DNA from: Isurus oxyrinchus
Lineage: Eukaryota
Length of the DNA stretch: 64,000 bases
NCBI GenBank assembly: GCA_026770705.1
Contig: JANJGN010000052.1
Coordinates: 372,001 to 436,000 of the forward strand
Reading direction: 5' to 3'
Within the stretch, counting starts at the first letter, position 1. Each line of letters starts with the position of its first letter. Shown here one piece after another: positions 5,480 to 44,589 of the stretch. The notes beneath the pieces were generated by a model. It worked only from the letters and a program-made list of their open reading frames with translations, was not told the DNA's origin and did not search any database. The position numbers and the translations under genes were made by a program.

Positions 5480-6440
5480 CCGTCAATACCATCTTCTAAA
5501 CAGGGGATTGGGTAGGAATCTGGTTTTATTGCTGCATTAACCTTTCTGTAATCTATGCAGAATCTGGTTGGAAATGAAATACCTGCTCCTTTTTACCTCC
5601 CTCCCTACGATGGTATCGTTTTAACATATTGATGTGTCACAGCCGATTCTTTATTCTACAATCTGGGGTGTCTATCAAATAATTTACTTGACCAACCCTC
5701 CTAATTACCTTGTGGGGACCACTGAACCGCGCTTTCAGAGGCTCCCCCTGCCAAGGCAATGATACTAACACGTCATCCCCCTGGTTGTGATGTTCGGGTC
5801 ACAGCTTGCCTGTCTGCCCCATTCCTTCATCTCTGTTTGAGAAACTATAAGATGTTCTTGTGCCACTTTGGAGGCTCCTATGAGCCGTTCCTGAAACATG
5901 GACACATCATCTGAAATAGAGGATTCATCCCTCTGTCCGGAATATCTTTCTTTGATGTATTTCAGACAGCCTCTTATCTCGTGTCCATAAGTTATTCCAA
6001 AAAGACTAAAACCTGCCGATTCAGTTGGTGAATCTCGTGTGGGAAATACAAGAAAATCCAGTCCTTTGTCCCAGTCATGGGGAGTTCATGACAATAGCTT
6101 CAATCATTGTTTTGAGTGTTTGTTGGTCCCTCTCTAAAGATCCCTGTGTCTATGGATGATATGCTGTGGACTTTAACTGTTTTATACCCAAATTACTCAT
6201 TATGTTCGGAAAATTTTAAGACATAGAGATGGAACCTTGATCTGACTGGATCTCCAGCAGTAATCCATAATGGGTAAAAAATTGGGTTAACTTCCCTATT
6301 ACTACTTTAGCTGTAATTGTTCCTAAAGGGATGGTCTCTGGAAATCGAGTTGTCATATCCATCATAGTGAGGCCATACTGGAGTCCGGCTTTCATTTTCG
6401 ATAATGGTCTAATACAGTCCACTAATGCTCGTATCCAATG
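5480..6440 (-). mobile_element. Degenerate Gypsy-type LTR retrotransposon integrase fragment
   Basis: VDCIRPL...TTRFPETIPL...EIQSDQGS integrase core; downstream DWDKGLDFLVF-like segment. Confidence 0.8.
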
Positions 6441-6569
6441 GTAACGGACAATTAGCTCACTGGAGGAGGGGAATCCACAAATATCCCCATCCTCAATGAA
6501 GGGGGAGCCCAGCACATCAGGGCAAAAGATAAGGCTGAAGCATTTGCTACAACAATTATCCATTTCTGT

Positions 6570-8620
6570 CTGGCGTAAAAATAAATCAGGAAATGGTGCT
6601 CAACCAGGGCTTACAAAAGAAATTAGGGATAGTATTAGATCCAGAGAGGAGACATAAAATTGCCAGGGGAAGCAGCAATGCCGAGGATTGGGAGCAGTTT
6701 AGAATTCAGCAAAAGTGGACAAAAAGATTGATCAAGAAGGGGAAAATGGAACATGGGAGTAAACTTGCAGGGAACGTAAAAACCGACTGTAAAAGCTTCT
6801 ATAAATATGTGAAGAGAGGAAGATTAGCGGTGACCGATGTAGGTTCCTTGCAGTCAGAAATGGGGGAAATTCTAATGAGAAACAAAGAAATGGCAGAAGA
6901 ACTGAACATATATTTTGGTTCTGTCTTCACAAAAGAGGACACAAATAATTTCCCAGGAATGTTAGGGAACCAAGTGTCTAGTGAGAGGGAGGAATTGAAG
7001 ATAATCAGGATTAGTTTTAAAAAATGGAGCTGGAGAAATTAATGGGTTAAAGGTTGAACAGTCCCCAGGGCCTGAAAATCTACATCCCAGAGACTAACGG
7101 AAGTGACCCTGGAAATATTGGAAGCACTGGTGGTCATCCTCCAAAATTCTATAGGCTCTGGAGCAGTTCCTATAGATTGGAGGGTGGCAATTGTAACCCC
7201 ACTATTTAAAATAGAAGGGAGAGAAAAATCAGAGAATTACAGATCAGTTAGTCTAACATGGGGAAAACGCTAGAGCCTATTATATAAGGTGTGCTAACGG
7301 AACGCTTGGAAAGCATTAATGGGATTAGACAAAGTCAGCATGGGTTAATGAAAGGAAAACCATGCTTAACTAATCTACTGGAGATTTTGAGGATGTAACT
7401 TGTGGAATAGATAAGGGATAACCAGTGGATGTGGTGTTTTTAGATTTCAAGAAGGCTTTTGATAAGGTCCCACATAAGAGGCTAGTGGGCAACATTAAAG
7501 CCCATGGGATTGGGGGTAATTTACTGGCATGGATTGAGAATTGGTCGACAGACAGGAAACAGAGGGTCAGAATAAATTAGTCTTTATCTGAGTGGCAGGC
7601 GGTGACTAGTGGTGTACCACAGCGATCCGTGCTTGGGACCTAACTATTCACGATATATTTAAAGGACTTGGGTGAAGGAGCCAAGTGCAATATTTCCAGG
7701 TTTTCTGATGACACAACGCTGGGTAAGGGTGTGAGCTGTGAGGAGGATGCAAAGAGGCTTCAAGGCGATTTAGACAAGTTGTGTGTGTGGGCAAACACAT
7801 GGCAGATGATGTGGATGAATGTGACATTGTAGGCTTTGGTGTGAAAAACAGAAAGGCAGAGTATTATTTAAATGGTGATATAATGGGAAATGTGGATGTA
7901 TAAAGGGATCTGGGTGTCCTTGTGCACTAGCCAATGAAAGTAAACAGGCAGGTGCAGCAAGTAATTCGGAAGGCAAATGGTATGTTGTCCTTCATTGCAA
8001 GAGGATTTGTGTTCAGGAGTAGGGATGTCTCACTGCAGTTATACAAGGTCTTGGTGAGACTGCACATGGGGTACTACGTGCCGTTTTGGTCTCCCTCCCT
8101 AAAAAAGGATAGACTTGCCGTCGAGAGAGTGCAGAGAAGGTTCTCTAGGCTGATACCAGGGGCGGCAGGACTGTCGTATGAGGAGAATTGCTACGACTGG
8201 GTCTGTATTCACTAGAGTTTAGAAGAATGAGAGGAGACCTGAATAAACGTAAGAAATTCTAACAGAGATAGACAGACTGGATGGAGGGAGGATGCATCCC
8301 CTGGTTGGGGAGTCTAAAACCAAGGGCGACAATCTCAGGATACAGGGCAGGCCATTTTGGACGGAGATAGGGAAACATTTCTTCACTCAGAGGGTGGTCA
8401 ATCTGTGGAATTCTCCATCACAGAGGCTGTGGAGGCCGGGTCACTGAGTGTATTCAAGAAAGAAACTGATAAATATTTTGATATTAGGGTCATCAAAGGG
8501 TACGGAGAGAAAGCAGGAATAAGGCTTTGAGATAGAGGGTCAGCCTTGATCATATTGAATGGCGGAGAAGGCTTGAAGGGCTGAATGTCCTAATCCTGCT
8601 CCTAGTTTCTATGTACCTAG
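6570..8620 (+). mobile_element. Degenerate CR1 LINE (ORF2 RT plus 3' UTR)
   Basis: KSFYKYVK, LYKVLVRLHMGY..FWSP motifs; CR1-type tail ending cctgctcctagtttctatgt. Confidence 0.9.
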
Positions 8621-19954: not shown

Positions 19955-20179
19955 GGTAACCAGTGAGAAGATCGAGGATGTTTTGTGCTCTCAGCAAAAC
20001 GTTTACCATGTGATGATCTGTCAGCTCAAATTTGGGCAGCTGTAGTCATGAAGCTTCTCCATTGGCTCCGTGGGTTTAGACTCCTCCCCCTCACCTCGGA
20101 GGCTGAAACTCAGGCGATAAGAGTTCCTAATACAGGTCTCTGGCCTTATGATACATTTCAACGATCCCTGTTATCATTA

Positions 20180-21570
20180 CGGAGGGAGTGCTGCACTGTC
20201 AGCGGGAGTTTACTGTGGGATTGCTGCTCTATCAGAGGGTCAGTACTGAGGGAGTGCTGCACTGTAAGAGGGTCAGTACTGAGGGAGTGCTGCACTGTCG
20301 GAGGGTCAGTACTGAGGGAGTGCTGCACTGTCATAGGGTCAGTAATGAGGGAGTGCTGCACTGTCAGAGGGTCTGTACTGAGTGAGTTCCGCACAGGTGG
20401 AGGGTCAGTATTGAGGGGGTGCCGGACTGTGGGAGGGTTTGTACTGACGTAGAGCGGAGTGCGAGGAGATATCCTTTCATGACAAAGTTTAACTGGAATT
20501 TATTTAAACAGAATTTAAACAGTACTGTGTGTTATTGCAAAAGAAAGGATTTGAGGAACTAACTCTTGTTCCCGTAAGCCTAAAAATAATTTTCACTGAT
20601 TTCTATGATTTAGCATTGAAACCTCCCTCTTTGGGCACCAGTCTTGATTGAAACAACTCGCACAGCACTGTGGGAGGGTGAGTACTGAGGGAATGCTGCA
20701 CTGTGGGAGGGTGAGAACTGAGGGAGTGCTGCACTGTGGGAGTGTGAGTACTGAGGGAGTGTTGCACTGTGAGAGGGTCAGTACTGAGGGAGTGCTGCAC
20801 TGTGGGAGTGTGAGTACTGAGGGAGTGCTGCACTGTGGGAGTGTGAGTACTGAGGGAGTGCTGCACTGTGGGAGAGTGAGTACTGAGGGAGTGCTGCACT
20901 GTCAGAGGGTCAGTAATGTGGGAGTGCTGCACTGTCACAGGATCAGTAATGAGGGAGTGCTGCACTGTCACAGGATCAGTAATGTGGGAGTGCTGAACTG
21001 TCGGCGGGTCTGTACTGAGTGAGTTCCGCACAGTCGGAGGGTCATTATTGAGGGGGTGCTGGACAGTGGGAGGGTTAGTACTGAGGTAGAGTGGAGCGTG
21101 AGGAGATATCCTTTCATGGCAAAGTTTAACTGGAATTTATTTAAACAGAGAGTCTTGTACTGTGTGTTATTGCAAAAGAAAGGATTTGAGGAACTAAGTC
21201 TTGTTCCCGTTAGCCTAAAAATAATTTTCAACGATTTCAATGATTTAGCAATGAAACCTCCCTCTTTGGGCATCAGTCTTGATTGAAACAACTCACACAG
21301 CACTTCAGGAGAGTGAGTACTGAGGGAGGGCTGCACTGTGGGAGAGTGAGTACTGAGGGAGTGCTGCACTGTGGGAGCGTCAGTACTGAGGGAGGGCTGC
21401 ACAGTGGGAGGGTGAGCACTGAGGGAGTGCTGCACTGTGGGATCGTCAGTACTGAGGGAGTGCTGAACTGTTGGAAGGTCAGTAGTGAGGGAGGGATACA
21501 GTGTCAGAAGATCAGTCCTGTGGGAGTGCTGCACTGTCAGAAGGTGTGTACCGAGGTAGTGCTGCACACA
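20180..21570. repeat. Three blocks of 33-bp SINE-like minisatellite (gagggagtgctgcactgtcagagggtcagtact) separated by a duplicated ~220-bp spacer
   Basis: 11-aa periodic spurious ORFs; 20440-20660 resembles 21075-21300. Confidence 0.9.
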
Positions 21571-21794
21571 GCCAGACAATGCCGTGGTTATGATGTGTCC
21601 ACACAGCAGGACTGGGGAGCACCAGGTATAAGGAAAAGTTTCAGCTTGCTGAGGAGAAGAAGGAGAATCTCTCGTTCCAGGTTTCTCTCCGTACATTAAG
21701 AAGCAGGCATGCCGATGTTTCATTGCACTCTGTCTGCTGATGGGAGTCCGCTTGGAAATTGCTGTTTGTGCTGATGGAAAGAATAAACTTTTCA

Positions 21795-22400
21795 TAAATC
21801 GAGGGATTGAGTACAAACACAGGGAGGTTATGCTGAACATTTATAAAGCTCTGGTTAGGTCACAACTAGAGTATTGTGTCCAGTTCTGGTCTCTTCACTT
21901 TGGGAAGGAAGTGAGGGTCCTTGAGAGGGTGGGGAGGAGATTGAGCAGAATGGGTCCAGGGATGAGGGATTTTAGCTACAAGGTTGGGTTGGAGAAGCTG
22001 GGGTTGTTCTCCTTGGAGCAAAGGAGATTGAGGGGGGATCTGATCGAGGTGTACAAGATGATGATGGGTTTAGATACGGTAGACAAAGAGAAGCTGTTGC
22101 CATTAGCTGATGGGACAAGGACTGGGGGACACAGATTGAAGGTTTTGGGCAGAGGGGGATGTGAGGAGGAACTTTTTTAAACAGCGAGTGGTAATGAGCT
22201 GGAACTCACTGCCTACGAGGATGGTGGAAGCGGAGACGATGAACAATTTCAAAAGGAAATTGGATGGACACTTGAGGGGAAATAAACTCACAGGGATACG
22301 GGGATAGAGAGGGGGAATGGGACTGAGTGGATTGCTCTACAGAGAGACAGCATGGACTCAATGGGCTGAATGGGCTCCCACTGTGCTGGAATGCCTCTCT
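21795..22400 (+). mobile_element. CR1 LINE 3' fragment
   Basis: YKALVRSQLEYCVQFWS...LGLFSLEQRRLRGDLIEVYK. Confidence 0.92.
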
Positions 22401-22509
22401 GATACGAAGGTGATTTTAACCAGGACACTGACCAGTTTCATTGCAACTTAACCCAACATCACACATTATTTGTCCGCACTGACTGACCAGATTGTTGCTG
22501 TACAAAGCT

Positions 22510-22649
22510 TCAAACAGTCTGTCGACTTCCTTTCACTGTTTGTCTCTCCCAGACACAGACTCCAGTGATAGTGATAACCACAGCCACAAGGAATATCACA
22601 GCTCGTATTCCCAGGATCAGGATCACGTGCAGAATCTCTCCTCCACTGT
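22510..22649 (-). CDS. Gene B: TM exon with intramembrane Arg and short tail (SGGEILHVILILGIRAVIFLVAVVITITGVCVWERQTVKGSRQTV*)
   Basis: ttctctag acceptor, phase 1, 140 bp to TGA at 22510-22512; hand-translated (ORF track shows another frame). Confidence 0.85.
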
Positions 22650-24312
22650 CTAGAGAACACACAGAAAGAAATCATCACTGACTCTCCACTTTCAATCTCT
22701 CACTCTGGCTGAACAATCAAGCTTCATAACACTGCAACATTTGCTGTAATATTGACCCATCCACTGGGATTCAATGTGGAATGAATGTTTTCATTGTAAA
22801 CACTCCAAGAGTGGACAATCGGAACTTTCCCCTTAGCGTGGAACATTGGTGAGAATGGATCATTGTGCTGTTGGACTCCCTGTCCAATGTTTCTCTCCAT
22901 CGCTGTGTACAGGATTGTGCTGTAGAAAATTCTGGAAATGTTTAGTGCAGGGTGGAAATCCATCTCGGATGCGTGTGCGAATCGGGCAGGATCGAGATGG
23001 ACTCCCCCACGGACTTACACACCCCGCTAAATAAACAGTTCCAATCTTTACCCAGAGAGAGGGGAGAATGTGGAACTCACTCCCACTGGGAATGGTTGAG
23101 GTGAACAGTATCAATGTATTTAAGGGGCAGGAGGGTCGGTAACCAGAGGGACACAGATTGACAAACCGGAGGGGGAGATGAGGAGAATTTGTTTTGACAG
23201 AGCGAGTTGTTGTGATCTGGAAGGTGCTGCCTGAAAGGGCGGTGGAAGCAGATTCAATAGGAACTTTCAAAAGGGGAATTGGATAAACACTTGAAGGAGG
23301 AAGATGGGGGCAAAGTGGAGTGGTGGTTAGTGGATCTGATTGGATAGAACATTGAAAGACCTGGCACAGGCACAATGGGCTGAATGGCCTCCTCCTGTGC
23401 TGTACCATTCTCCGCTTCCATGATCTCTCCCCCAGTCAGTAACCACTCCAGATCCCTCTTGAAGGTGACAGAGAAACAGCAACCACCACACCCACTGACA
23501 GCACATTCCCGAGGATCACTACTCTCTGGGAAAAGATGAACTCCCCAACATCCAGCCTATTCCTGCTTCCCGGAGAGTGTAAACACTTCAGGGAGGTGCT
23601 GAGGAAGTTCTCAATAAAATGAATTATCAAATCTACCATTTGAGAAATAATTGAATTCCGATGAACTCACAGCTTGTGTAGCAAACTGGGAAGTAGATTT
23701 GCTTGAAAAGCTGGGAAACACAAGGATTAAGTGCTACAATGCCACCACTGGTGGGAGGCTGTAACTACAGTGTGACGTTTACATAGGCAGTCATCACTAT
23801 AAACAGGGGCTTTGGACATAATGGGCACGGAAATAGTGAGAACAGGATGTAAGCTTTTCATCAGCAGGAATTCTCTTACTAAACCTCTCCACCTCTCTCT
23901 TACTCTCAGATTCACAAAAAAATCACAGAATCAGATAAAGAGGAGTTGGGACTAGTTATTCGTCAAAGGGTTAGGTTTCAGGTAGCTCCTTAAAGGGAGA
24001 GAGAGAGTTGGAGAAGCAGAGAGTATCTATGAGTGCCTCTATGCATCTGAGTGTTTGTACGAGTAATTTCCATATTCTTCCATAAATATGAATGGGAACA
24101 CAAATCCCAGAATTCAGCCCACGCTCCAGTGCAGTACTGAGGGAGGTCAGATAACCCATGAGGGAGTCTTGTGCTAGTGTGTTTGTTTGTGAGTGTGTCT
24201 TTGTGTGTGGTCATATATGTGTGTCTGCACGTGTCTATTTAGGTCTGTACGTTTGAGGGTGTTTGTGTAGTATTCGAATCTGAGAGAGATGTTGAAGTCT
24301 GTGTACACTCAC

Positions 24313-24465
24313 ATTCCACAGTAATGGTTATGAACCCCTCCACTGCTCCATGTTCATTCTCTGCCACACACTGATAGTCTCCAGTGTCCCTGGATGTAAC
24401 GTGAGGAATCAGCAACCACAGCTCATTGTTGGAACTTCTTCTGTTCATTTGGACATTCAGATGTC
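24313..24465 (-). pseudogene. Gene B: 5'-truncated C2 exon (...MNRRSSNNELWLLIPHVTSRDTGDYQCVAENEHG...ITVE)
   Basis: Only the 3' half is present, donor intact; flanks match those of 36065-36346. Confidence 0.85.
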
Positions 24466-24988
24466 ATGGCAGGAATCAAGAACCCCGTTCGCACGATTAC
24501 CAACAGAAAGTGAACAACAATTTATACTTAATGGAAAGACAGTGCTGATTGGTTGGCAAGTGGTCTCTGATAGGTGGAGGTGTTGCCGTGGAGAATGCTG
24601 TTTGCGATATGAGAAGTTTAGACAGCTTGTCTCTTCATTCAGCAATAATCATATAAAGATCAATTAACTTCTATCGACTGTGAAGCACTTTGAGTGGCCT
24701 GAGAATGTGGATACTGAGAACGGGCTGCACTGTCAGAGGGTCAGCGCTGAGGGAGTGCTGATGTAGAATGAAAGATGTCGGTACAGTTAATGCTTTTCAT
24801 CATTGATATTAAAGTGATTTTTAGAGGTTGCTTTGGGACTGAACTGGAAGCTATCACCAGGTTATTGAGAATCAGACAGTGTGTTATAATAAGCTGTGTT
24901 TTGTGTTATTATGTAAACGTCACAGTTTGTGTTATTTCCCATTGAGTGTTGGATGTGAATTGTTGAGTAATTATAACACAGCACTTAC

Positions 24989-25362
24989 CAGAAACGTGAA
25001 GCTGGGTTACAGGATAGTAGCTGTAACTATTCCTGCTGTCAAACTCTATTCTGAAAAAATAAGGTCCTGCATCTTCCCGTCTGATGTTGTTTATAATCAG
25101 GGAACAGTCACCATCTTTCAGGTCTCCAGACAGCCGGGTACGATGGCGGAATCTTTGATCCCTGTGATTGTGACCCTCGGAGTGAAAGGCTATAGACCAT
25201 TTAGGCTGTGGGTTCCCATCTATTCCTTTCAACCAGATTCTGCACGTGATCTCCCTACGAAATTTGATAAGTAACTGTAATGACATGGAATCTGTACACA
25301 TGAACCTTCCTGTGCTGTCACCTCTCGTGGAGTGTCACCTTTCCACTCTTGTGACAGTCCAA
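24989..25362 (-). pseudogene. Gene B: V-set pseudo-exon (Arg present: DAGPYFFRIE)
   Basis: 374 bp, frameshift near 25240-25270 splitting it over two ORFs; acceptor AG>CG relative to V1. Confidence 0.88.
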
Positions 25363-26065
25363 CGGGGGAGAGAAATATCAATATTTGACTCTGGATGGTT
25401 TGTAGATCCACTAGACTCGATATCCACCCCCTCCATCACTGGGGCACAGTGGCTGCAGTGTGGACCATCTACAGGACACACAAGGAACTCCCCAAGGTTT
25501 CACAACAGATAGAAGAGAATCCTGGACACAGGAGTGGACAAGTTCATTCTACATTGGCTCATGGTCCTCAGGACCCTGTTTAGTGAAGCCAGTCTTCCAT
25601 CCAACACAGTGTCTACAAGATACACAGGGAAACTGTGTAAATATCTCATCTCTCAACACTGAATGGGCTGAGCTTCAGTTTAACTTTCAGTATTTTTAAA
25701 TTTCCATATTGTGGTTGCTATGGTGAAACTGTGCAGGAAGTGTGAGGGCTGGACTCTCTGTCTATTCTCACTGCAGCTGTGATGTGGTCGTGGTGATTCT
25801 CAGTAAAATGAAACCCTCTGATCTCCTCCATCGCCGAGGTTTAGGGAGTGAATTCCAGAGCTCAGGTCCCAGGCAGCTGTAGGCACGGCCGCCAGTATTG
25901 GAGTGATGGGAATTGGGGGATGGTCAAGAGGCCAGATTTGGAGTAACACAGAGATCTGGGAAGTTGATTGGTTGCATTGCAGGAGGTTACAGAGATAAAG
26001 AGATAAGAATGATCTTTTACAAAGACTGTTAAATATAAATCTGTCGAAGCTGACGATGATATTAC

Positions 26066-26126
26066 CTTGGAGAAGTGACAAGAGGAAGTAGATTTCCCGA
26101 TCATTGTCCACTCCCAGATATTCCAT
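26066..26126 (-). pseudogene. Gene B: leader exon with 1-bp deletion; upstream ATG at 26126 gives MEYLGVDNDREIYFLLSLLQ
   Basis: Paralog of 19324-19405; gtagatttcc versus gtaggatttcc. Confidence 0.8.
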
Positions 26127-26675
26127 CCACTTCTCACTCTCAAGCTGTGAAAGAGAAAGGAGTTAATGAGACCTCACCTCTTGTCCGACAGCTCTCGAGA
26201 GATCAGAACTGCTTTTAGACAATGTCTTCACAGACTAATTTGATTCTCTGTGGGATGATAGGTGCTCAGCAGAGAGTTACAAGGCTTTAAGAAAAACAAA
26301 CAATGAAGGATTTGCATTTCTATAGCACCTTTCACCACCTCAGGGCATCCCAAAGCTCATGTCTCTGCACTTCCCTCATCCCTTGAACTAGAAAGATGTT
26401 CGGTACAACAGACTTGAGCCTCACACCCAGATCTCAATAATCAGTAGAAATCTTTCAAAGGCATCAGTCATTGGAATCTGTCTTTATAAAGTCACAACAT
26501 CAACAAAGGACGGTGTTGGTGGTGGAAGTGAATTCCAATCGTTCCGTTACTTACCCAGGACCTGTCCGACTGCTCGCCTGGGGAGGAACTGCCCACACGC
26601 TCTGCTTGGGCTGAATGACCTCTTCCTGTGCTGCTCCCTCTGTGTATTTAATGAGAAAGGGTTGATGTGTGTCTG

Positions 26676-26695: not shown

Positions 26696-27439
26696 GGATC
26701 AAAGTGACAGACCAGCTCATGTTTTGAGATGTTGGTGAACTGTTAACCCTTTGTGTCCTGACCCTGTGTTGATATTTCTGCTCACAGGTGGACAGTCATT
26801 GACCAGGAGTTTCTCCTGTGGGTCAGTGGGTTTCACAGCCAAATTCAGGGGGTCAGAATGTTGTGGGATTCAAGACCCCATTCAGGGGACGTCTGCCCCA
26901 CAGAGTAGACTGAAACTGCCCAGCGTCAGTCCTGAGGGAGTGCTGCACTGTCGGATGGTCATTACTGCACTATTGTAAGGTCAGTACTGAGGGAGATCTC
27001 CACTGTTTGAGGGTGAGTACTGAGGGAGTGCTGCACTGTCAGAGGGACATTAATCAGGGAGTGCTGCAATGTTGGAGGATCAGTACTGAGGGAGTGCTGC
27101 ACTGTTGAAGGGTCAGTATTAAGGTGCTGATTTACAAGACAGGACAATGGATTAGGAGCCCTCAGAACTCCCCCCGTGATTTCCAATCATTCCGTTACTT
27201 ACCCCGGACCTGTCCGACTGCTCGCCTGGGGAGGAACTGCCCACACGCTCTGCTTGGGCTGAATGACCTCTTCCTGTGCTGCTCCCTATTTGTGTTTAAT
27301 TAAAAAGGGTGGATGTGTCACTGTGAGACAAAATGAGGAAGTGCTTGGTACCAAGTGAGAAAGATGCTCTTTGCCTCGCACTGTTAGAAAACTGTTAACC
27401 CTTTGCGTGCCAAGAATGTTTTTGAAGGGCCATTGACTG

Positions 27440-30642: not shown

Positions 30643-30759
30643 TTATAAATTCCCATAAACAGAATCCTTGGCAAATTCACAGTTTGCGTAAAGATCATCA
30701 TCTGTATCAGGATTGACTCCGCGGTTAGATTTCATTTCCAGATCCTTCTCATCTTTCTT
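30643..30759 (-). CDS. Gene C: terminal cytoplasmic exon (KKDEKDLEMKSNRGVNPDTDDDLYANCEFAKDSVYGNL*)
   Basis: tttctattacag acceptor, phase 0, 117 bp to TAA; acidic-Y-x-N motif and terminal SxYxxL; absent from ORF track. Confidence 0.85.
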   Translation of the reverse strand, partial: KKDEKDLEMKSNRGVNPDTDDDLYANCEFAKDSVYGNL

Positions 30760-30857
30760 CTGTAATAGAAACAGAAATGATCAGAGTGACAATCAGAGTG
30801 ATCAGTGTTTAGTATTATTGATCCAAATCAAAAAATTCCATCCACAGTAGAGACATT

Positions 30858-32519: not shown

Positions 32520-32624
32520 CTGATTCCTCAAAGCCCAACCACGCTCACAGTTTTCATAAACAGGACCTCGATATTCATCAACACGGTGGTTCGATTTGAT
32601 TCCTGCTTTCCCCTCACCTCTCTT
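32520..32624 (-). CDS. Gene C: candidate cytoplasmic exon ((K)RGEGKAGIKSNHRVDEYRGPVYENCERGWALRNQ)
   Basis: Pyrimidine tract ends tttcGG with in-frame AAG 3 nt downstream; cag|gtgagt phase-0 donor fits the terminal exon. Confidence 0.6.
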
Positions 32625-33940: not shown

Positions 33941-34037
33941 TTTCTCACACACTTGAAGATGAAGAATCCACTCAGTCCAACACTCAAACAGATTCCAGCT
34001 CCAAGCAATCCTGCTTTCCATTCATTGGAATCTCGCC
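33941..34037 (-). CDS. Gene C: TM exon (RRDSNEWKAGLLGAGICLSVGLSGFFIFKCVRK), no charged residue in the hydrophobic span
   Basis: ttttacag acceptor, gtaagt donor, 97 bp, phase 1 to 2; hand-translated. Confidence 0.88.
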
Positions 34038-34209: not shown

Positions 34210-35265
34210 AGGAGGATTCACATATAACAGGGGTGCCAAGCTGCTGAGGTGACACACAGGACTACATACACACCAAACAGCGGAAACAACATGCTACAGA
34301 CAGAGCAAAGCGATCCCACAACCAACGGGTCAGATCTAAGCTCTGCAGTGCTGCCACATCCAGTCATGAATGGTGATGGACAATTAAAGATCTAACAGGA
34401 GGAGGATGTTCCACAAATATCCCCATCCTTAATGATGGGGGAGCTCAGCACATCAGTGCAAACGACAAGGCTGAAGCATTGGCAACCATGTTCAGCCAGA
34501 AGTGCTGAGTGGATGATCCATCTCGGCCTCCTCCAGAGGGTCCCAGCATCACAGATGTCAGCTTTCAGACAATTCGATTGACTCCACGTGACATCAGGAA
34601 TCAGCTGATGATACTGGATACAGCAAAGGCTTTTGGCCCTGGCAACAACCCGGCAACAGGAAATAATGTGGTTACAAGAACGGGTAAGAGGCTGGGAACT
34701 CTGCGGTGAGTAACTCACCTCCTGACTCTCCAAAGCCTGTCCACCATCGACAAGGCACAAGTCAGGATTGTGATGGAATAATCTCCACTTGGCTGGATGA
34801 GTGCAGCTCCAACAACACTCAAGAAGCTCGACACCATCCAGGAGCAGCTTGTTTGATCGACAGCCCATCCACCAGCATAAACATTCATACCCTCCACCAC
34901 TGGCACACAATGGCAGCAGTGTATGCACCATCTACAAGATGCACTGCAGCAACTCACCAAAGCTTCTTCGACTGCACCTTCCAAACCCTTAACCTCTTCC
35001 ACCAAGACAGTTCCAAGTCAGTGAGGTGTGTGACTTGGAAATCAACATGAGGTGGTGGTCTGCCCTGGGACTTGGAACTATATCGGCCGTTCCTTCACCG
35101 TCGTTGGGTCAAAATCCTGGAACTCCCTCCCTAACAGCACTGTTGGTGTGCCTACACCACATGGACTGCAGTGGTTAAAGAAGGCAGCTCACCACCACCT
35201 TCTCAAGGGGCAGTTACAGATGGGCAATAATTTCTGGCCTTGTCAACAATGCCCACATCCCATGA
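34210..35265 (+). mobile_element. Deleted/degenerate CR1-L2-clade LINE fragments
   Basis: Shares segments with 56.4-57.5 kb (inverse) and 60.8-61.2 kb; KSWNSLPNS motif. Confidence 0.75.
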
Positions 35266-35303
35266 GCTAATAACAAGAGAATGTAGAATTCTGTGTAACT
35301 CAC

Positions 35304-35585
35304 GTTCCACAGTGATGGTTATGAATCCCTCCACTGCTCCATGTTCATTCTCTGCCACACACTGATAGTCTCCAGTGTCCCTGGATGTAACGTGAGGAAT
35401 CACCAACCACAGCTCATTGTTGGAACTTGTTCTGTTCATTGGGACATTAAGATGTCGCCACGTCAGGTTAGAAGCTGGGAAGCTCTCGACAGAGCAGATT
35501 ATCACTGTAGAATTCCCCTCAATTATATTGATCGATGAAGCGTTAATCATATCAAGAGAAGTAATTGAGAGGTTCTGTGGAGCAT
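35304..35585 (-). CDS. Gene C: C2-set exon (domain 5)
   Basis: tttag acceptor, gtgagt donor, 282 bp, open. Confidence 0.9.
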
Positions 35586-36064
35586 CTAAAAACATATAAA
35601 GATTTTAGAGTGAGCAAGCACAATGCACATCAAGACTCCATGTATCATCTCTCCGTATCTGATGTCTGAATACAATTCCAGGCACCTTCCTCAGCATAAG
35701 TTCCTCTGTCACATTTATAATGGACACTGCCTATGTAAACTGTCACACTGCAGTTGCATTCCCCCACCAGTTGAGGTGCTATCAATCTAGAATGAAAGAA
35801 ACTTTCATTCACATCCTCAGGATTTCGCCAAGCCTTTACAGGCAATGAATTGTATTTGATTGATGGAGCACTGAGGGGTAAATCTACAATTCACTGTTCA
35901 GGAGTTTGGTCATCCAATTCAGGGTCTTGTTGATCTGGAGTTTACCTTCGTTCCATCCAGAATTGGAGCTGACACCAAGACTCCAGTGCAGTGAGTGCGT
36001 GTGGGAGTGCATTTATGTATATGTGTTCAAATCTGAGAGAGTTGTTGAAGTCTGTGTAACTCAC

Positions 36065-36346
36065 GTTCCACAGTGATGGTTATGAACCCCTCCACTGCTC
36101 CATGTTCATTCTCTGCCACACACTGATAGTCTCCAGTGTCCCTGGATGTAACGTGAGGAATCACCAACCACAGCTCATTGTTGGAACTTGTTCTGTTCAT
36201 TGGGACATTAAGATGTCGCCACGTCAGGTTAGAAGTTGGGAAGCTCTCGACTGAGCAGATTATCACTGCAGAATACCCCTCAATTATATTGATCGATGAA
36301 ACGTTAATCATATCAAGAGAATTAATTGAGAGATTCTGTGGTGTGT
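36065..36346 (-). CDS. Gene C: C2-set exon (domain 4)
   Basis: ttcag acceptor, gtgagt donor, 282 bp, open. Confidence 0.9.
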
Positions 36347-36477
36347 CTGAAAACAAATAAAGATCAGTTACTTACATTGTCTGTGAAGCACTTTGAGAGG
36401 CCCTGAGAATGTGAAAGGTCTGATATCAATGTAGGTTCCTTCACCACAAAGCACTTAATTCAGGCAGTCACTACAGC

Positions 36478-37370
36478 TCAGTACTGAGGGAGTGCTGTAC
36501 TGTCGGAGGGTCAGTACTGAGGGAGTGCTGCACTGTTGGAGGGTGGGTACTGTGAAAGCTGCACTGCCGCATAGTCAGTATTGAGCGAGTACTTCACTGT
36601 CGGAGAATGAGTACTGAGGGAGTGCTGCACAGTTGGATGGTCAGTACTGAGGGAGTGCGGCACTGTCGGAGGGTCAGTACTGAGGGAGTGCTGCACTGTT
36701 GGATGGTCAGTACTGAGGGAGTGCTGCACTGTTGGATGGTCAGTACTGAGGGAGTGCTGCACTGTTGGAGGTTCAGTACTGATGGAGTGCTGCACTGTTG
36801 GATGGTCAGTACTGAGGGAGTGCTGCAATGTCGGAGGATCAGTACTGAGAGAGTGCTGCATTGTCAGAGGGTCAGTACTGAGGGAGTGCTGCACTGTCAG
36901 AGGGTCAGTACTGAGAGAGTACTGCACTGTCAGAGGGTCAGTACTGAGGGAGTGCAGCACTGTTGGATGGTCAGTACTGAGGGAGTGCTGCACTGTCAGA
37001 TGGTCAGTACTGAAGGAGTGCTGCACTGTTGGATGGTCAGTACTGAGGGAGTGATGCACTGTCGGAGGGTCAGTACTGAGGGAATGCTGCACTGTCGGAG
37101 GGTCAGTACTGGAAGAATGCTGCACTGTCGGATGGTCAGGACTGGAAGATTGCTGCACTGTCAGATGTTCAGTACTGAGGGAGTGCTGCTCTGTCGGAGG
37201 GTCATTACTGAGGAAGTGCTGCATTGTCGGAGGGTCAGTACTGGAAGAGTGCTGCACTGTTGCAGGGTCAGTACTGAGGGAGTGCTGCACTGTCGGAGGG
37301 TCAGTACTGAGGGAGTGCTGCACTGTCGGAGGATCAGTAATTAGGGAGATCTGCACTGTTGGAGGGTGAT
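36478..37370. repeat. 33-bp SINE-like minisatellite array
   Basis: About 27 units. Confidence 0.92.
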
Positions 37371-37374
37371 AAGA

Positions 37375-39650
37375 CCATAAGACCACAAGACGTCAGAGCA
37401 GAAGGAGGCCATTCGGCCAATCAACTCTGCTCCGCCATTCAATGACACCATGGCTGATCTGACAATCCTCAACTCCACTTTCCTGCCTCTTCCCCATAGC
37501 CTTTGATTCCCTGACTGATTAAAAAACTGTGTCTCTCAGCCTTGAATATAATTAATGACCCAGCCTCTGCAGCTCTCTGTAGTAAAGAATTCCACACATT
37601 CACTACCCTCTGAGAGAAGAAACTCCTCATCTCTGTCTTAAATGGGTGACCCCTTACTCTGAGATTATGCCCTCTGGTCCTAGACTCTCCCACAAGGGGA
37701 AACAACCTCTCAGCATCTACCCTGTCAAGCACCCTAAGAATCTTATATGTTTCAATAAGGTCAGCTCTCATTCTCCTAAACTCCAATGAGTACAGGCCCA
37801 TCCTACTCAACCTCTCCTCATATGAAAATACCTCATTACTGGGATCAACCTAGTGAACCTTCTCTGGACTGCCTCCAATGCCAGTACATCTTTCCTTAGA
37901 TAAGGGAACCAAAACTGCTCACAGTATTCTAGGTGTGGTCTAACTAGTGCCTTGTAAAGTTTTAGCAAGACTTCCCTATTTTTATACTCCATTCCCTTTG
38001 AAATAAAGGCCAACATTCCACCTGCCTTCCCTATTAACTGTTGAACTTGTATGTTATCTTTCTGATGACCCCCAAATTCCTCTATGCTTCAGCTTTCCAA
38101 TGTCTTTCTCCATTGAAATAATATTCAGCTCCTCTATACATCCTGTCACAGTGCAGCAGCTCACATTTTCCCACATTATATTCCATCTGCCAAGTTGATG
38201 TCCACTCACTGAACCTGTCTATGTCCCTCTGTAGACTCTTTGTGTCACCCTCACCACTTGCCTTCCCATCTATTTTTGTGTCATCCGCAAACTTGGCGAA
38301 AGTACATTAATTTCCCTCATCCAAGTCATTAATATATATTGTAAATAATTGTGGCCCCAGCACTGATCCCTGTGGCAATCCACAGGTTGACATCCTGAAA
38401 ATGCCCCCCTTATCTCAAATCTCTGTCTTCTCTTAGTTAGTCGATCCTCTATCCATGCTAATATACTGCCCCCAACACCATGGGCTCTTATCTTATTAAG
38501 TAGCCTTATATGTGGTAATTTACTGAACAACTTTTGGAAATCCAAATATATTACATCTACTGGTTCCCCTTTATCTATCCTGTTTGTTATCTCCTCAAGG
38601 AATTCTAATAAATTTGTCATGCATGATTTCCCCTTCATGAAGCCTGTGTGTGATTAAATTATGCATTTCTAAATAGTCTGCTATTACATCCTTTATAATG
38701 GACTCTAACATGTTCCCATTGACAGATGTTAAGCTAACTGGCCTATAGTTTCCTGTTTGTTGTCTCCCTCCCTTTTTGAATATGGGTGTTACTTTGGCAG
38801 ATTTCCAATCCTCTGGGAGTTTCCCAGAATCTAAGGATTCTTGGAAGATTAAAACCAGTGCATCCACTATCTCTGCATCTACTTCCTTTAATATCCTAAG
38901 ATGCAACCTATCAGGTCCAGGGGACCTATCAGCCTTGAGACCCATGACTTTCCCTAGTATTATTCTCTAGTGATAGTTACTGTATTTATTTCCTCCCCCC
39001 ACCCCCCTTTTGCCCCTTGATTATTTAGTATTTTTGGAATGCTATTAGTGTGTTCTACCGTGAAGACTGATGCAAAGTATTTATTCAACTCCTCTGTCAT
39101 TTCCTGGCTCCTCATTATTATTTCCCCAGCCTAGTTCTCTCAGGGGCCTATGTTCACTTTGGTCTCTCTCTCCCTTTTTATATATTTAAAGAAGCTTTTA
39201 CTGTCCTTTTTTTATAATTTGCTAGTTTACATAGTTTTCTGCCTCTTTATTTATTTTTTGGTCATCTTCTGTTGGTTTTTAAAACGTTCCCAATCCTCTG
39301 GCTTACCACTAACCATATTGCATGGTTTCTCTTTCAATTTGACACACGCCTGAACTTCTTTGGGTAACCCAGGTTGGTTTATTCTCTTCCTACAATCCTT
39401 CTTCCTCACCGGGATATATCTTTGTTGTGAGTCATGAGATATTTTCTTAAAGATCTGCCATTGTTCATCCAGCATCTTTTCTGCTAAACCCCTTTCCCAG
39501 TCCACTCCAGACAACCCTGTCCTTATTTCTTTGTAATTACACTTATTTAAGTCCAGCACAGTTGTTTCCGACCCAAGTTTCTCAGTCTCAGAGGGAATGC
39601 TGAATTGTACCAGGTTATGGTCATTTTTTTCCAGGGGATCATTTATTCTG
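37375..39650 (-). mobile_element. CR1 LINE (ORF2 RT plus 3' tail)
   Basis: GNYRPVSLTSV, KSCMTNLLEF, VDVIYLDFQK, LYKALVRPHLEYC. Confidence 0.93.
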
Positions 39651-39739
39651 AGATACAGTTCAGAGGAAAACCACCCATTAATATATCCCGTGTCAGTCAC
39701 ACCGTAGCAATAGAGAATTCCGATGGAATAGGGGCCTTT

Positions 39740-40440
39740 ACCCCAAGGAAGTGGGAATACAAAGAGGCTCGGAGAGATGCGTCAGGTTATAAATCTCTGC
39801 TCAGAGCCCACCTGCAGTTAGTGGCTTCAGTTGTGGGTCCCGCCCCTCAGGGAGGGTATATTGCCCTCCGAGGGGCTGCAGCCCAGAGTCACCAGAACGA
39901 TCCCGGGGCTGAAAGGGTTAAATTCTGAGGACAGGTTGCACAGACCAGGCTTGTGTTCCCTCGAGTCTTGAAGATTAAGGGGTGATCTAATCGAGGGGTT
40001 TAAGATGATTAAAGGATTTGATGGGGTCGATAGAGAGAAACTATTTCCCCTGGTGGTGGGGGTGAGGTGAGGGGGTGGGGGTGAGGGTGGGGGTGGGGGT
40101 GGGGGTGGGGGTGGGGGTGAGGGTGGGGGTGGGGGGGTGGGGGTGGGGGTGAGGTGAGGGGGGGTCCAGAACAAGGGGGCAGAATCTTAAAATTGGAGCC
40201 AGGCCGTTCAGGGGGTGATGTCAGGAAGCAATTCTTCACACAAAGGGGGGGTGGAAATCTGGAACTCTCTCCCCCAGAAAAAGCTGTCGAGGCTGGGAGG
40301 GGTCAATTGTAAATTTCAAAACTGACATTGGGAGATTTCTGTTGGGTCGGGGGGTGTTTAAGGTTTAAGGAACCGAGCTGGGTGGATGGGGTTAATATAC
40401 AGAACAGCCGTGATCTGATTGAATGGGGGAACAGGCTGAT
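39740..40440 (+). mobile_element. CR1-derived element with internal (GGGGGT)n tract at 40050-40165
   Basis: CR1 3' ORF2 homology; paralogs at 32690-32970 and 54310-55400 (inverse). Confidence 0.8.
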
Positions 40441-41021
40441 TATTGAATGACTGGGAATGTCAGCCCAGTGTATGGATCGCCAATCTCTAGAATGGGAGGA
40501 TTCCTCTTCTATTGGAATTCATTCAGTAATGTGGGCATCACTGGCAGGGCCAGCGTTTATTGCCCATCCCTAGTTGCCCCTTGAGAAGGCGGTGGTGAGC
40601 CGCCCGCTCGAATACAACTGAGTGGCATGCCCGGCCCATTCAGAGGGGCAGTTAAGATTCCCCTGTGGGTCAGGAGTCACATGTAGGCCAGACCGGGTAA
40701 GGATGGCAGAATTCCCTCCCTAAAGGAGATTACTGGCCCAGATGGGTTTTTACAACAATCTGGTAGTTTCATGGTGACCATCACTGAGAATTGTGAACAA
40801 ACTGTGGAGAAATGTCGACTTGCCAGCCAATCAGCACGCCCTCTTCCCCCGCATCAGAAATGGCTGTTCCCTTTGAGATTGGGTTTTCTCGTGACTCTGT
40901 CCTGACGAGGATTGAAACCTTCGACAGCATGTTTTCAGCAACACCCAAGGGGAGATTTGGTTCACCTCGGAGTTTGGACAAGATGTGGAATTGTTTAAAA
41001 GTCAGGATTGAAATTACTCAC

Positions 41022-41279
41022 ATTCAGTGGGAATTCTAATGGGCAGAGACTGGGAACTGCCCAGGATACTTGTTGCTTCACAGTAGTAGGAGATTTCCTC
41101 ATCGAATCCATAAGGAACTGTAATAGTTTGACCAGCGAGCGCGAGATTCGTCATCTTTCCTTGGGAGATCTTAAACCAGGTGAAATTGTGGACTGCTGGA
41201 TTCCCGTCACTGGAACAACTTAGAGAAATCACCTTTCCTTTTTCCAGTGTCAGCCTGACAGACGTGTTGTGAGGAGAAT
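41022..41279 (-). CDS. Gene C: C2-set exon, domain 3 (DSPHNTSV...LSCSSDGNPAVHNFTWF...YYCEATSILG)
   Basis: aag acceptor, gtgagt donor, 258 bp, phase 1/1. Confidence 0.88.
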
Positions 41280-41787
41280 CTTTCAAATACAAAATTATCA
41301 ACACATTAAACACTGAGTGTGATGGAATTCTCTCCAGTTGCCGGGATGAGTGCGGCTCCAACAACACTCAAGAAGCTCGACACCATCCAGGACAAAGCAG
41401 CCCGATTGATTGGCATCCCACCCACCATCTTCAACATTCACTCCCTCCACCATGAACACACATTGTTAGCAGTGTGCACCATTTTATTAGTGATGATCTT
41501 ATATTGATGGCCCCTAACTCTTCGTCACTCCGACAAGTGGAGACATCTTCTCCACATCTACCCTATCGAAACCCTTTCACCATTTTAAGGACCTCGATGA
41601 GGTCACCCCCTCAGCCTTCTCTTTTCTAGAGAAAAGAATCCCAGCTTGTTCAGTCTTTCCTGATAGCTATAACATCTCAGTTCTGGAATCATCCTTGTCA
41701 ATCCAACTTGCGCCTTCTCCAATGCCTGATTTAATAGGAGACCGACTCCCCCTCCATCACAAGCATGATGTTCTAATCAATACTTAC

Positions 41788-42075
41788 ACTTTACACTCAG
41801 AGTAACGGAGCTGACCACTCGATGGCTGGTTTGAGGGTAGTCGCACGTACAGCGGAGAGTTCGTCCATGATGCTTGAACGAAGGGTTAAAGGTCAGTAGA
41901 GCGGAAACCTCACCACCGTTCTCTGTAATGTTGCTGACCGATGAAGTCAGCAATTCACTCCAGGTTAGATTGGGGTGGTTATCAGGGCAGGTGTAGAGGC
42001 ATTTACAGATGATATGTGCAGGAGTCCCCTCCTGTAAATCCTTCAGGAGCACAATAACTGGCTTATCTGGAGCAT
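41788..42075 (-). CDS. Gene C: Siglec domain-2-type C2 exon (DAPDKPVIV...ICKCLYTCPDNHPNLTW...HHGRTLRC)
   Basis: tacag acceptor, gtaagt donor, 288 bp; Cys+6 interdomain cysteine. Confidence 0.9.
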
Positions 42076-42159
42076 CTGTAATAGAAAGTTCCAGATGTTA
42101 ACTGACAAGCAGAAAACAATTTGTATTTGTCCTCTGATTTTTCAATAGGGTCACAGACA

Positions 42160-44030: not shown

Positions 44031-44162
44031 CACCAGATCACATACTGGACTTTGTTCTGACATCTCCTGGAGCAGGAATTCAACCCATGACTGCCTGGCT
44101 CTGAGATGAGAACATGACCCCCTTGTGCTGATAGACTGAGTGTGAAAGGAACTGGGACTTAC

Positions 44163-44519: not shown

Positions 44520-44589
44520 CTGAAAGGCAACAAGGGAAGAGACAGGACATCAAAAAGCAGAATATTACTTCAATGGAGAGAGGCAGCAG

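What the first reader, a model, noticed from the sequence alone, without database searches (positions are those of the whole stretch)
22510..22649. Hidden activating-type TM exon: intramembrane Arg and 12-aa Tyr-free tail
Phase-1 translation gives ILHVILILGIRAVIFLVAVVITITGVCVW-ERQTVKGSRQTV*. A basic residue in the TM with a short tail is the signature of receptors coupling to DAP12 or FcR-gamma (Siglec-14/15/16, LILRA, GPVI). The exon is intact although gene B's ectodomain is broken, so it marks a recently dead activating paralog. Being phase 1, it could also be spliced to gene C's last C2 exon (35304) to give an activating isoform.
Basis: partly seen in the sequence, partly recalled or inferred. 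Interest (0 to 1): 0.8.

Follow-up and report, generated by a model that had tools for sequence, protein, structure and literature searches.

The report
Orphan shark activating-receptor membrane exon
This is an intact copy of a membrane-anchor exon that many shark immune receptors share; its buried arginine and very short tail mark activating receptors that signal through a partner chain, but here it sits behind a broken receptor gene.

Summary
On the minus strand an AG acceptor (22651-22650) opens a phase-1 exon. It encodes DSGGE-ILHVILILGIRAVIFLVAVVITITGVCVW-ERQTVKGSRQTV*, with the stop at 22512-22510.

It is a copy of a conserved shark cassette. Of 28 fetched shark RefSeq models, 26 carry LGIRA. 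Of those 26, 25 end 21-29 residues after it, with no Tyr in the tail. They come from 8 species, with Siglec/CD33-, CD22-, SLAM- and pIgR-like ectodomains. The nearest are Carcharodon carcharias models (43 of 46 identical). The "broken donor" idea fails, because K-G-S is coding in several orders.

New here: spliced contigs show the exon runs to 22488 (162 nt, donor ctg|gtcagt). The stop lies 22 nt before that junction, and a further exon starts at 21770.

Gene B upstream has four lesions. Gene C has its own uncharged TM exon and an ITIM-like tail, so the two form an activating/inhibitory pair.

The contigs end on ..AG and show no C2 joint. They therefore probably come from a near-identical sibling gene, not from gene B or gene C, and the proposed gene C isoform is not supported. 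The adaptor is unknown.

The scan noted the same cassette twice elsewhere in this genome.

The parts
22650..22651 (-). Splice acceptor AG, preceded by a polypyrimidine tract (ttctttctgtgtgttctctag)
   Evidence: Contigs X4 rec20 and X5 rec27 leave the genome here.
22488..22649 (-). Exon as seen in spliced contigs: 162 nt, phase 1 in and phase 1 out
   Evidence: table 8. X5 record 27 is 850 nt and its positions 391-554 lie on 22488-22651, with 1 other letter. X4 record 20 is 208 nt and its positions 45-208 lie on the same span.
22513..22649 (-). Coding part: extracellular stub SGGE, TM helix and 12-residue tail
   Evidence: 43 of 46 identical to C. carcharias models.
22549..22635 (-). Hydrophobic span I6-W34, the TM segment
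22603..22605 (-). CGA codon of the intramembrane Arg (R16, motif LGIRA)
   Evidence: motif present in 26 of 26 cassette-bearing relatives.
22510..22512 (-). Stop codon TGA, 22 nt upstream of the exon's donor
22486..22487 (-). Splice donor GT (ctg|gtcagt)
   Evidence: The X1 loose end lies at 22488.
21771..22487 (-). Intron within the 3' untranslated part. It holds a LINE-tail repeat from about 22385 downward.
21576..21770 (-). Unique start of the next (3'UTR) exon, behind acceptor ttccatcag. Further 3' it runs into a 33-nt satellite. How far it extends beyond 21576 is inferred from the 390 nt of X5 rec27.
   Evidence: (30 of 30 match at 21741-21770). Pfam finds nothing.
26066..26104 (-). Gene B leader exon, with a 1-nt deletion (AAATC-TAC) that shifts the frame after MIGKS
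   Evidence: Laid contigs carry the extra base at 26089.
24989..25362 (-). Gene B V-set exon. Its acceptor is CG instead of AG (25364-25363), and it has an internal 1-nt deletion near 25242.
   Evidence: One X1 contig has the extra base.
24313..24463 (-). Gene B C2 exon fragment: 5' half lost, donor kept
33941..34037 (-). Gene C's own TM exon, uncharged (AGLLGAGICLSVGLSGFFIF, then KCVRK). This is the inhibitory-type counterpart.

Best explanation
The exon is an intact copy of a conserved shark 'LGIRA' cassette, which is the terminal coding exon of activating-type Ig-superfamily receptors. It supplies a short extracellular stub, a TM helix with an Arg in its outer half, and a 12-residue tail with no signalling motif.

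By analogy with known receptors, such a receptor cannot signal alone. The Arg would pair with the two TM aspartates of a dimeric ITAM adaptor of the zeta/FcR-gamma or DAP12 kind, and that pairing would also permit surface expression. This step is inferred, not shown.

In this window the cassette lies 3' of a degenerate Siglec-like gene (gene B), which has four lesions. It also lies beside gene C, a paralog with an uncharged TM and an ITIM-like tail. The locus therefore looks like an activating/inhibitory pair whose activating member has decayed.

The mRNA form of the cassette has a 162-nt exon. The stop lies 22 nt before a donor, and a further untranslated exon follows 717 nt downstream. The spliced contigs that show this most likely come from a near-identical sibling or orthologous gene of V-C2(FTDKP)-TM architecture, not from this locus.
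For: Sequence and hydrophobicity.

Homology: 10 hits at E <= 1e-3. Nine are shark receptors and one (P0008) is repeat junk. The match lies at the very C-terminus in 7 of the 9 and within 2 residues of it in an eighth.

Cassette across relatives: 26 of 28 fetched models carry LGIRA, and 25 of those 26 end 21-29 residues later. The tails are KGSRQTV*, KGS*, KGN*, KEN*, RTV* and TNS*/QNS*, with no Tyr.

Source and spread: all are RefSeq or GenBank shark models from 8 species. Orders were checked for three species.

Nearest relatives: C. carcharias models are 43 of 46 identical. The three differing residues (L11, T29, R36) are states seen in other species.

Transcript structure: spliced contigs in runs from two studies, plus a loose end that maps exactly to 21741-21770.

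Gene B lesions.

Gene C's uncharged TM and its YxN/ITIM-like tail exons.

Assembly rule (Arg in the upper half pairs with zeta/gamma, central Lys with DAP12): passages of PMC13107469.
Against: - No adaptor was identified or tested. A 2014 survey found no FcR-gamma homologue in cartilaginous fish (PMC4016189, passages).
- No dedicated TM predictor was available, so the Arg's depth rests on hydropathy windows alone.
- The runs are only guessed to be RNA. A processed DNA copy could give the same joined contigs.
- The contigs differ from the window by only 1 of 164 letters, so they could be from this very locus. In that case the exon is not orphaned.
- The gene B leader and V frameshifts are absent from some laid contigs. 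They could be haplotype-specific or assembly errors.
- I could not see the 296 nt that lie 5' of the exon in the 850-nt contig.
Confidence: 0.6

Rival explanations
1. The exon is still in use at this locus. Either gene B is intact in other haplotypes or individuals and splices V directly to the TM exon, giving a one-domain receptor like the whale-shark model P0006. Or an upstream gene uses it as an alternative last coding exon.
For: - Contigs match the exon at 163 of 164 letters and match the next exon at 30 of 30. Every annotated C. carcharias copy differs from the window by at least 3 residues.
- Laid contigs carry the missing base in the leader (26089; for example X5 at depth 23.4 of 23.4) and in the V exon (25242; X1 at 15.7 of 20.4). 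A leader-to-V joint 25362/26066 is seen in X1 and X4.
- All candidate upstream exons are phase 1.
Against: - With likeness set at 90, paralogs cross-map, so those contigs need not come from gene B.
- X5 has depth 0 on gene B's V exon, yet 86.8 on the TM exon.
- Both spliced contigs align to 22651, so the upstream exon ends ..AG. Gene B's V ends ..TG, its C2 fragment ends ..AT and gene C's C2 ends ..AC.
- No joint from 22651 into 21900-26300 was among the 15 of 52 joints shown, although weaker joints were shown.
- The truncated C2 and the CG acceptor are not typical read errors.
Confidence: 0.25
2. The TM Arg does not recruit an ITAM adaptor. These short-tailed receptors would then be decoys or adhesion molecules, or the Arg snorkels to the outer head-groups and serves ER retention or oligomerisation.
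For: - An 18-residue uncharged stretch (A17-W34) follows the Arg and could nearly span the bilayer alone.
- No FcR-gamma homologue was found in cartilaginous fish in the 2014 survey (PMC4016189).
- No experimental work on these shark receptors turned up.
Against: - Ten mostly strongly hydrophobic residues (ILHVILILGI) precede the Arg. The best hydropathy windows of 19-25 residues all include it.
- LGIRA is invariant in 26 of 26 copies across three orders while neighbouring residues vary. That fits a specific contact.
- One cassette is shared by at least four ectodomain types, which fits a common signalling partner.
Confidence: 0.1
3. The exon is a former long-tail (inhibitory) TM exon. It is phase 1-1 and keeps a donor, and the frame stays open across the junction into the 21770 exon. 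The stop would then be a secondary truncation.
For: - The exon is 162 nt, which is 54 codons.
- After the TGA the frame is open to 22488 and on through 21770 (minus-strand ORF 20971-21840).
- Stops sit at different places in different lineages: RTV*, KGS*, KGSRQTV*.
Against: - None of the 25 short-tailed relatives reads on.
- The downstream frame has no Pfam match and no ITIM or ITAM. After about 195 nt it is a 33-nt satellite that is open in several frames all over the window.
- An uncharged TM would be expected in an inhibitory ancestor.
Confidence: 0.05

Closest known systems
RefSeq-predicted Carcharodon carcharias 'Siglec-7/12/13-like' and 'CD33-like' proteins (e.g. XP_041037236.1, XP_041037231.1, XP_041037141.1)
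   Same: They share the same terminal cassette, DSGGEILHVI(Q/L)ILGIRAVIFLVAVVITI(A/T)GVCVWE(G/R)QTVKGSRQTV*, with 43 of 46 residues identical. Their V and FTDKP-type C2 exons are 91-98% identical to gene A's exons in this window.
   Different: Those models have intact leader-V(-V)-C2 ectodomains, and the cassette follows an FTDKP-type C2 exon (..LTVQ|D). Here no such exon lies upstream, and the nearest ectodomain (gene B) is broken. These are automatic predictions with automatic names. No function has been tested.
Human Siglec-14/Siglec-5 and Siglec-16/Siglec-11 paired receptors (recalled, not from a call)
   Same: In both cases a Siglec-like V-set receptor with a TM Arg and a short tail sits next to an inhibitory paralog with a related ectodomain. 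In both, activating members are often pseudogenised.
   Different: The origin is independent, since CD33-related Siglecs are a mammalian radiation. The shark cassette is also attached to CD22-, SLAM- and pIgR-like ectodomains. DAP12 coupling is unproven in sharks.
FcalphaRI (CD89), NKp46 and NKp30: receptors with Arg in the upper half of the TM that assemble with zeta/FcR-gamma dimers (PMC13107469, passages)
   Same: Both have Arg rather than Lys, lying in the N-terminal half of the hydrophobic span, and a short tail with no motif.
   Different: Here 7-10 hydrophobic residues precede the Arg, so it may sit deeper than in CD89. There is no sequence homology. FcR-gamma was not found in cartilaginous fish in 2014 (PMC4016189).

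Membership tests
Shark LGIRA TM/short-tail cassette (terminal coding exon of RefSeq-predicted Siglec-, CD22- and SLAM-like receptors) | Significant sequence similarity over the whole exon, placed at the protein's C-terminus | tested here: met
   E from 3.6e-14 to 6.4e-4 for the 9 shark hits; 93.5% identity to the C. carcharias models.
Shark LGIRA TM/short-tail cassette (terminal coding exon of RefSeq-predicted Siglec-, CD22- and SLAM-like receptors) | Invariant L-G-I-R-A motif in the outer half of the TM | tested here: met
   present in the window and in 26 of 26 cassette-bearing relatives.
Shark LGIRA TM/short-tail cassette (terminal coding exon of RefSeq-predicted Siglec-, CD22- and SLAM-like receptors) | Stop 3-12 residues after the TM, with no Tyr in the tail | tested here: met
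   the window tail is ERQTVKGSRQTV*. 25 of 26 relatives are likewise short.
Shark LGIRA TM/short-tail cassette (terminal coding exon of RefSeq-predicted Siglec-, CD22- and SLAM-like receptors) | Joined in phase 1 to an intact Ig ectodomain of the same gene | tested here: not met
   The acceptor and phase are fine. However, the upstream gene B has a leader frameshift, a CG acceptor, a V frameshift and a truncated C2.
ITAM-adaptor-coupled activating immunoreceptors (the DAP12-, FcR-gamma- or zeta-associated kind) | Basic residue inside the TM helix | tested here: met
   every top hydropathy window of 19-25 residues contains R16 at position 7-11. A dedicated predictor (DeepTMHMM) was not available.
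ITAM-adaptor-coupled activating immunoreceptors (the DAP12-, FcR-gamma- or zeta-associated kind) | Short cytoplasmic tail without ITIM, ITAM or other Tyr motifs | tested here: met
ITAM-adaptor-coupled activating immunoreceptors (the DAP12-, FcR-gamma- or zeta-associated kind) | Physical and functional association with an adaptor dimer carrying TM aspartates | not testable with these tools
PMC4016189 reports no FcR-gamma in cartilaginous fish.
ITAM-adaptor-coupled activating immunoreceptors (the DAP12-, FcR-gamma- or zeta-associated kind) | Paired inhibitory relative with a similar ectodomain nearby | tested here: met
   Gene C has an uncharged TM exon (34037-33941) and tail exons with VYENC, DLYANC and SVYGNL. 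Gene B's C2 fragment is 95-96% identical to gene C's C2 exons. The V domains differ.
Siglecs (sialic-acid-binding Ig-like lectins) | N-terminal V-set domain of the Siglec/CD22 type with the conserved Arg (F-R-I-E context) | tested here: inconclusive
   Gene B's V exon hits Pfam V-set (34.9 bits, cutoff 26). Its Ig_CD22 score is only 21.9, below the cutoff of 27. YFFRIEF is present, but the exon is frameshifted. That this motif defines Siglecs is recalled, not from a call.
Siglecs (sialic-acid-binding Ig-like lectins) | Binding of sialylated glycans | not testable with these tools
   This needs a glycan array or an Fc-fusion binding assay.

The most novel reading that the evidence does not exclude
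One short exon acts as a portable 'activation module' that sharks have attached to at least four unrelated Ig-receptor families: Siglec/CD33-like, CD22-like, SLAM-like and multi-V pIgR-like. It may signal through an adaptor not yet described in cartilaginous fish, where FcR-gamma was reported missing. At this locus the free-standing copy, 12.6 kb downstream of an inhibitory-type gene, might still be captured as an alternative last coding exon. One gene could then give both inhibitory and activating isoforms.
Probability: 0.12. Interest if true: 0.75.

Novelty: new member of a known kind. Interest (0 to 1): 0.4.

Why it matters
Paired activating and inhibitory receptors, and their charge-based coupling to ITAM adaptors, are well known in mammals, birds and bony fish. 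In sharks they are barely described. Seven full-text searches found no paper on this cassette.

Two points make the adaptor question worth testing with simple co-expression assays. One invariant LGIRA exon is shared by several receptor families across three shark orders. And a published survey failed to find FcR-gamma in cartilaginous fish.

This particular copy adds three things. It gives the exon's transcript anatomy: the stop lies 22 nt before a 3'UTR intron. It gives an example of birth-and-death turnover, with a broken activating member beside an inhibitory neighbour. It also corrects the exon's 3' boundary. By itself it is one more, probably orphaned, copy of something already present in RefSeq predictions and already noted twice by this scan in the same genome.

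Tried and rejected
- In-window paralogs of the exon. blastn and tblastn found none. The only flank match is a LINE-tail repeat (22385-22302 against 42167-42250, 86%).

- The 'broken donor' at aaag|gaagtc. Rejected, because K-G-S (or K-G-N) is translated in relatives from three orders and the real donor is at 22487.

- Long-tail read-through into the 21770 exon. There is no Pfam match, most of it is satellite, and no relative reads on.

- An annotated protein carrying exactly this exon. Three word-indexed searches used database proteins P0001, P0012 and P0002, restricted to their TM region, and covered lengths of 120-1132 aa. None was found. This does not prove absence, because the search is word-based and cluster representatives may hide such a protein.

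- Candidate TM for gene C at 34251-34307. Rejected, because it is out of phase and stops. The real one is at 34037-33941.

- Adaptor literature. Searches gave only PMC4016189 and PMC13107469 as relevant. I read passages of these two through 'find', not the whole texts. No supplements were consulted; supplements are closed, and those of PMC4016189 might list the shark searches in more detail.

- Spliced models. Exons were searched one by one, or through database proteins.

Full report
**What is there**

The finding lies on the minus strand. A pyrimidine-rich tract and an AG (a 22651, g 22650) precede an exon that begins at 22649. Read in phase 1, it encodes (x)SGGE-ILHVILILGIRAVIFLVAVVITITGVCVW-ERQTVKGSRQTV, followed by TGA at 22512-22510. 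The other two frames are closed. The Arg is CGA at 22605-22603.

A six-frame hydropathy scan shows this as the only clean, non-repeat TM-like segment on the minus strand, with a mean Kyte-Doolittle score of 2.95 over 19 residues. For windows of 19, 21, 23 and 25 residues, the three best windows always contain the Arg, at position 7 to 11. Ten mostly hydrophobic residues precede the Arg and 18 follow it. I had no dedicated TM predictor.

**Surroundings**

The window is a tandem array of Siglec-like genes on the minus strand.

- Gene C: V 44083-44628; Ig exons at 41780-42097, 41017-41367, 36030-36371 and 35206-35604.
- Gene B: leader 26104-26066, V 25362-24989, C2 fragment 24463-24313.
- The TM exon at 22649.
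- Gene A: leader at about 19.3 kb, two V exons, an FTDKP-type C2 at 9284-8988, and further C2 exons.

Compared with gene A, gene B has four lesions:
- a 1-nt deletion in the leader (AAATC-TAC);
- CG instead of AG at the V acceptor (25364-25363);
- a 1-nt deletion inside the V exon, between CHYSY and IW;
- loss of the 5' half of the C2 exon.

Gene C has its own TM exon at 34037-33941. It encodes AGLLGAGICLSVGLSGFFIF-KCVRK, without a charge. Its tail exons at 32624-32520 and 30762-30646 carry VYENC, DLYANC and SVYGNL. So C is inhibitory-type and B was activating-type.

**Relatives**

phmmer of the 46-residue exon product against 1.84 billion representatives gave 10 hits at E <= 1e-3. One of them (P0008) is repeat junk. 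The other nine are shark receptor models. The match lies at the very C-terminus in seven, within two residues of it in an eighth (P0007), and is internal in P0010.

With their cluster members and three region-restricted searches I fetched 28 shark proteins. Of these, 26 carry LGIRA. Of the 26, 25 end 21-29 residues after the motif. The exception, P0010, runs on into the next gene's C2 exon and looks like a fused model. The two without the motif (P0026, P0027) came in through ectodomain clustering.

The sources are RefSeq or GenBank models. They come from Scyliorhinus torazame, S. canicula, Mustelus asterias, Carcharodon carcharias, Chiloscyllium punctatum, C. plagiosum, Hemiscyllium ocellatum and Rhincodon typus. 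I checked the orders of three of these: Lamniformes, Carcharhiniformes and Orectolobiformes. The orders of the rest are recalled.

The ectodomains attached to the cassette are named CD33/Siglec-like, CD22-like, sialoadhesin-like (a single V), SLAMF9-like and pIgR-like. These names are automatic.

The nearest relatives are 12 C. carcharias models that end in the cassette, 10 of them in exactly DSGGEILHVIQILGIRAVIFLVAVVITIAGVCVWEGQTVKGSRQTV*. The window matches that sequence at 43 of 46 residues. Its three differences (L11, T29, R36) are states seen in other species. Gene A's exons are 91-98% identical to these models. The window therefore comes from C. carcharias or a close lamnid relative.

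The Arg is conserved and paralogs do not splice on to a long ITIM tail. The aaag-gaagtc stretch is translated as K-G-S (or K-G-N) in three orders, so it is not a recently broken donor.

**Transcript anatomy (new)**

The run search listed 23 runs that hold at least part of the stretch. For coded organism A the kind is only guessed as RNA, and 0.44-0.54 of the sampled words are held. That share is about what the exon plus its 3' flank contribute to the 515-nt query.

I laid contigs of X1, X4, X5 (organism A) and X19 (organism B) on 21900-26300 at likeness 90. The main results were:

- X5 record 27 is 850 nt at depth 86.8. Only its positions 391-554 lie on the stretch, at 22488-22651, with one other letter.
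- X4 record 20 is 208 nt. Its positions 45-208 lie on the same span, also with one other letter.
- X1 has a loose end at 22488. Its 30 letters match the window exactly at 21741-21770, just behind an acceptor ttccatcag.

The exon in mRNA is therefore 22649-22488: 162 nt, phase 1-1, donor ctg|gtcagt. The stop lies 22 nt before the junction. By the usual 50-55-nt rule, which I recall rather than tested, it should escape nonsense-mediated decay. A further exon starts at 21770. That exon is unique for about 195 nt and then enters a 33-nt satellite. It has no Pfam match.

Depth peaks on the exon bin in X1, X4 and X5 but is flat in X19. X19 also has contigs running across both splice sites, like DNA. 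Unspliced contigs across the donor exist too (X4 record 19; X1).

That X4 and X5 are RNA is my inference from these intron-free contigs. A processed DNA copy would look the same.

**Which gene owns the transcripts?**

Both spliced contigs align two letters past the exon start, onto the intron's 'ag'. This implies that the upstream exon ends ..AG.

- Exon ends that fit: FTDKP-type C2 exons end ..CAAG. This gives Q|D, as in every C. carcharias model.
- Exon ends that do not fit: gene B's V ends ..TG, its C2 fragment ..AT, gene C's two C2 exons ..AC, and gene C's 41780 exon ..GT.

Three further points agree with this:
- Gene B's C2 fragment is 95-96% identical to gene C's and gene A's C2 exons. 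A C2-to-TM contig would therefore have been laid as a joint, yet none is among the 15 of 52 joints shown, although weaker ones are shown.
- X5 has depth 0 on gene B's V exon.
- The 296 nt that X5 record 27 carries 5' of the exon is close to the 297 nt of an FTDKP exon.

No ..CAAG exon lies upstream of 22649 in this window. The contigs therefore most likely come from a sibling or orthologous V-C2-TM gene whose 3' module is nearly identical. Flanking non-coding contigs differ from the window by 2.4-3.7%, against 0.6% in the exon, which fits a paralog or another species.

This inference rests on two letters of alignment and on an absent row, so it is moderate, not firm. Against it, the contigs match this copy better than any annotated copy does. 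Also, some laid contigs carry the bases that gene B lacks: at 26089 in all four runs, and at 25242 in X1 at depth 15.7 of 20.4.

**Mechanism**

Shown:
- the sequence;
- its conservation;
- its place at the end of many predicted receptors;
- its splicing;
- the decay of gene B;
- the inhibitory-type neighbour.

Inferred: the Arg pairs with two TM aspartates of a dimeric ITAM adaptor. The review PMC13107469 (passages) states that Arg in the upper half of a TM couples to zeta-zeta or FcR-gamma dimers, and that a central Lys couples to DAP12. The same passages say that a correctly placed basic residue is sufficient even in a featureless TM.

Here the residue is Arg and it lies in the N-terminal half. 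I therefore lean to a zeta/gamma-type partner (about 45%) over a DAP12/DAP10-type partner (about 40%). The sequence cannot decide this. PMC4016189 (passages) reports no FcR-gamma homologue in the shark genomes available in 2014.

**Novelty**

The kind of receptor is well known, and the cassette is already present in RefSeq predictions. Seven full-text searches found no paper describing it.

This scan had already noted the same cassette twice in this genome. Note s1-300793 was followed up with the same conclusion. Note s1-871215 lies 572 kb beyond this window.

This copy is a new, probably orphaned member of the family. What it adds is the 3' exon structure and the view of the paired locus.

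**Limits**

- Exons were never joined for a search.

Noticed in passing
window 22727-23014 (minus), running on to 22619: A 96-codon open stretch lies in the intron just upstream of the TM exon. It matches residues 618-698 of the S. torazame model P0029 at 54% amino-acid identity (E 5e-28). The match continues across the TM exon in a different frame. Pfam finds nothing. An X1 contig covers 22622-23086 at depth 292.7. It could be a conserved intron, a retained intron in a fused gene model, or an unrecognised exon.
   Followed up: partly
window 22621-22637 and 25235-25251: A 17-nt perfect inverted match links the TM exon (AGATTCTGCACGTGATC) and gene B's V exon (blastn E 0.009). It overlaps the exact site of the V exon's 1-nt deletion, near 25242, where one X1 contig has an extra base. 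It may be chance.
   Followed up: no
window 33941-34037, 32520-32624, 30646-30762 (minus): Gene C has an uncharged TM exon (AGLLGAGICLSVGLSGFFIF-KCVRK) and tail exons with VYENC, DLYANC and SVYGNL. The related RefSeq model P0027 (C. carcharias, partial) seems to miss the TM exon. Instead it reads an AT-rich stretch (34141-34036) and a repeat-derived piece that also occurs at 27286-27206, 26695-26516 and 19897-19775.
   Followed up: partly
window 20161-21560, 26965-27186, 36514-37392, 46488-47096, 49140-49694, 59151-59372, 62199-62447: A 33-nt satellite, reading STDPxTVQHSL in one frame and open in several frames, is scattered through the locus. It forms most of the 3'UTR exon that follows the TM exon.
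   Followed up: partly
proteins P0016 and P0028 (S. canicula), P0009 and P0029: In relatives the cassette tail varies through alternative ends. The two S. canicula isoforms are identical up to ..WERRTV; one stops there and the other adds QGSPQSV. The Mustelus and S. torazame models end ..VWE+QNS or ..VWE+TNS. This suggests alternative donors or stops inside the exon.
   Followed up: no
proteins P0010 (C. plagiosum), P0029 and P0002 (S. torazame): Several RefSeq models fuse neighbouring genes or retro-element ORFs across this cassette. In P0010 the TM is followed by the next gene's C2. P0029 is a 987-aa chain of many V domains. P0002 has a retro-element-like N-terminus. Automatic annotation of these arrays is unreliable.
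   Followed up: no
window 37472-39781 and 6219-8527: LINE reverse-transcriptase ORFs are inserted in introns of gene C and gene A. A LINE-tail fragment at 22302-22385 lies in the intron after the TM exon (86% to 42167-42250, inverted).
   Followed up: no
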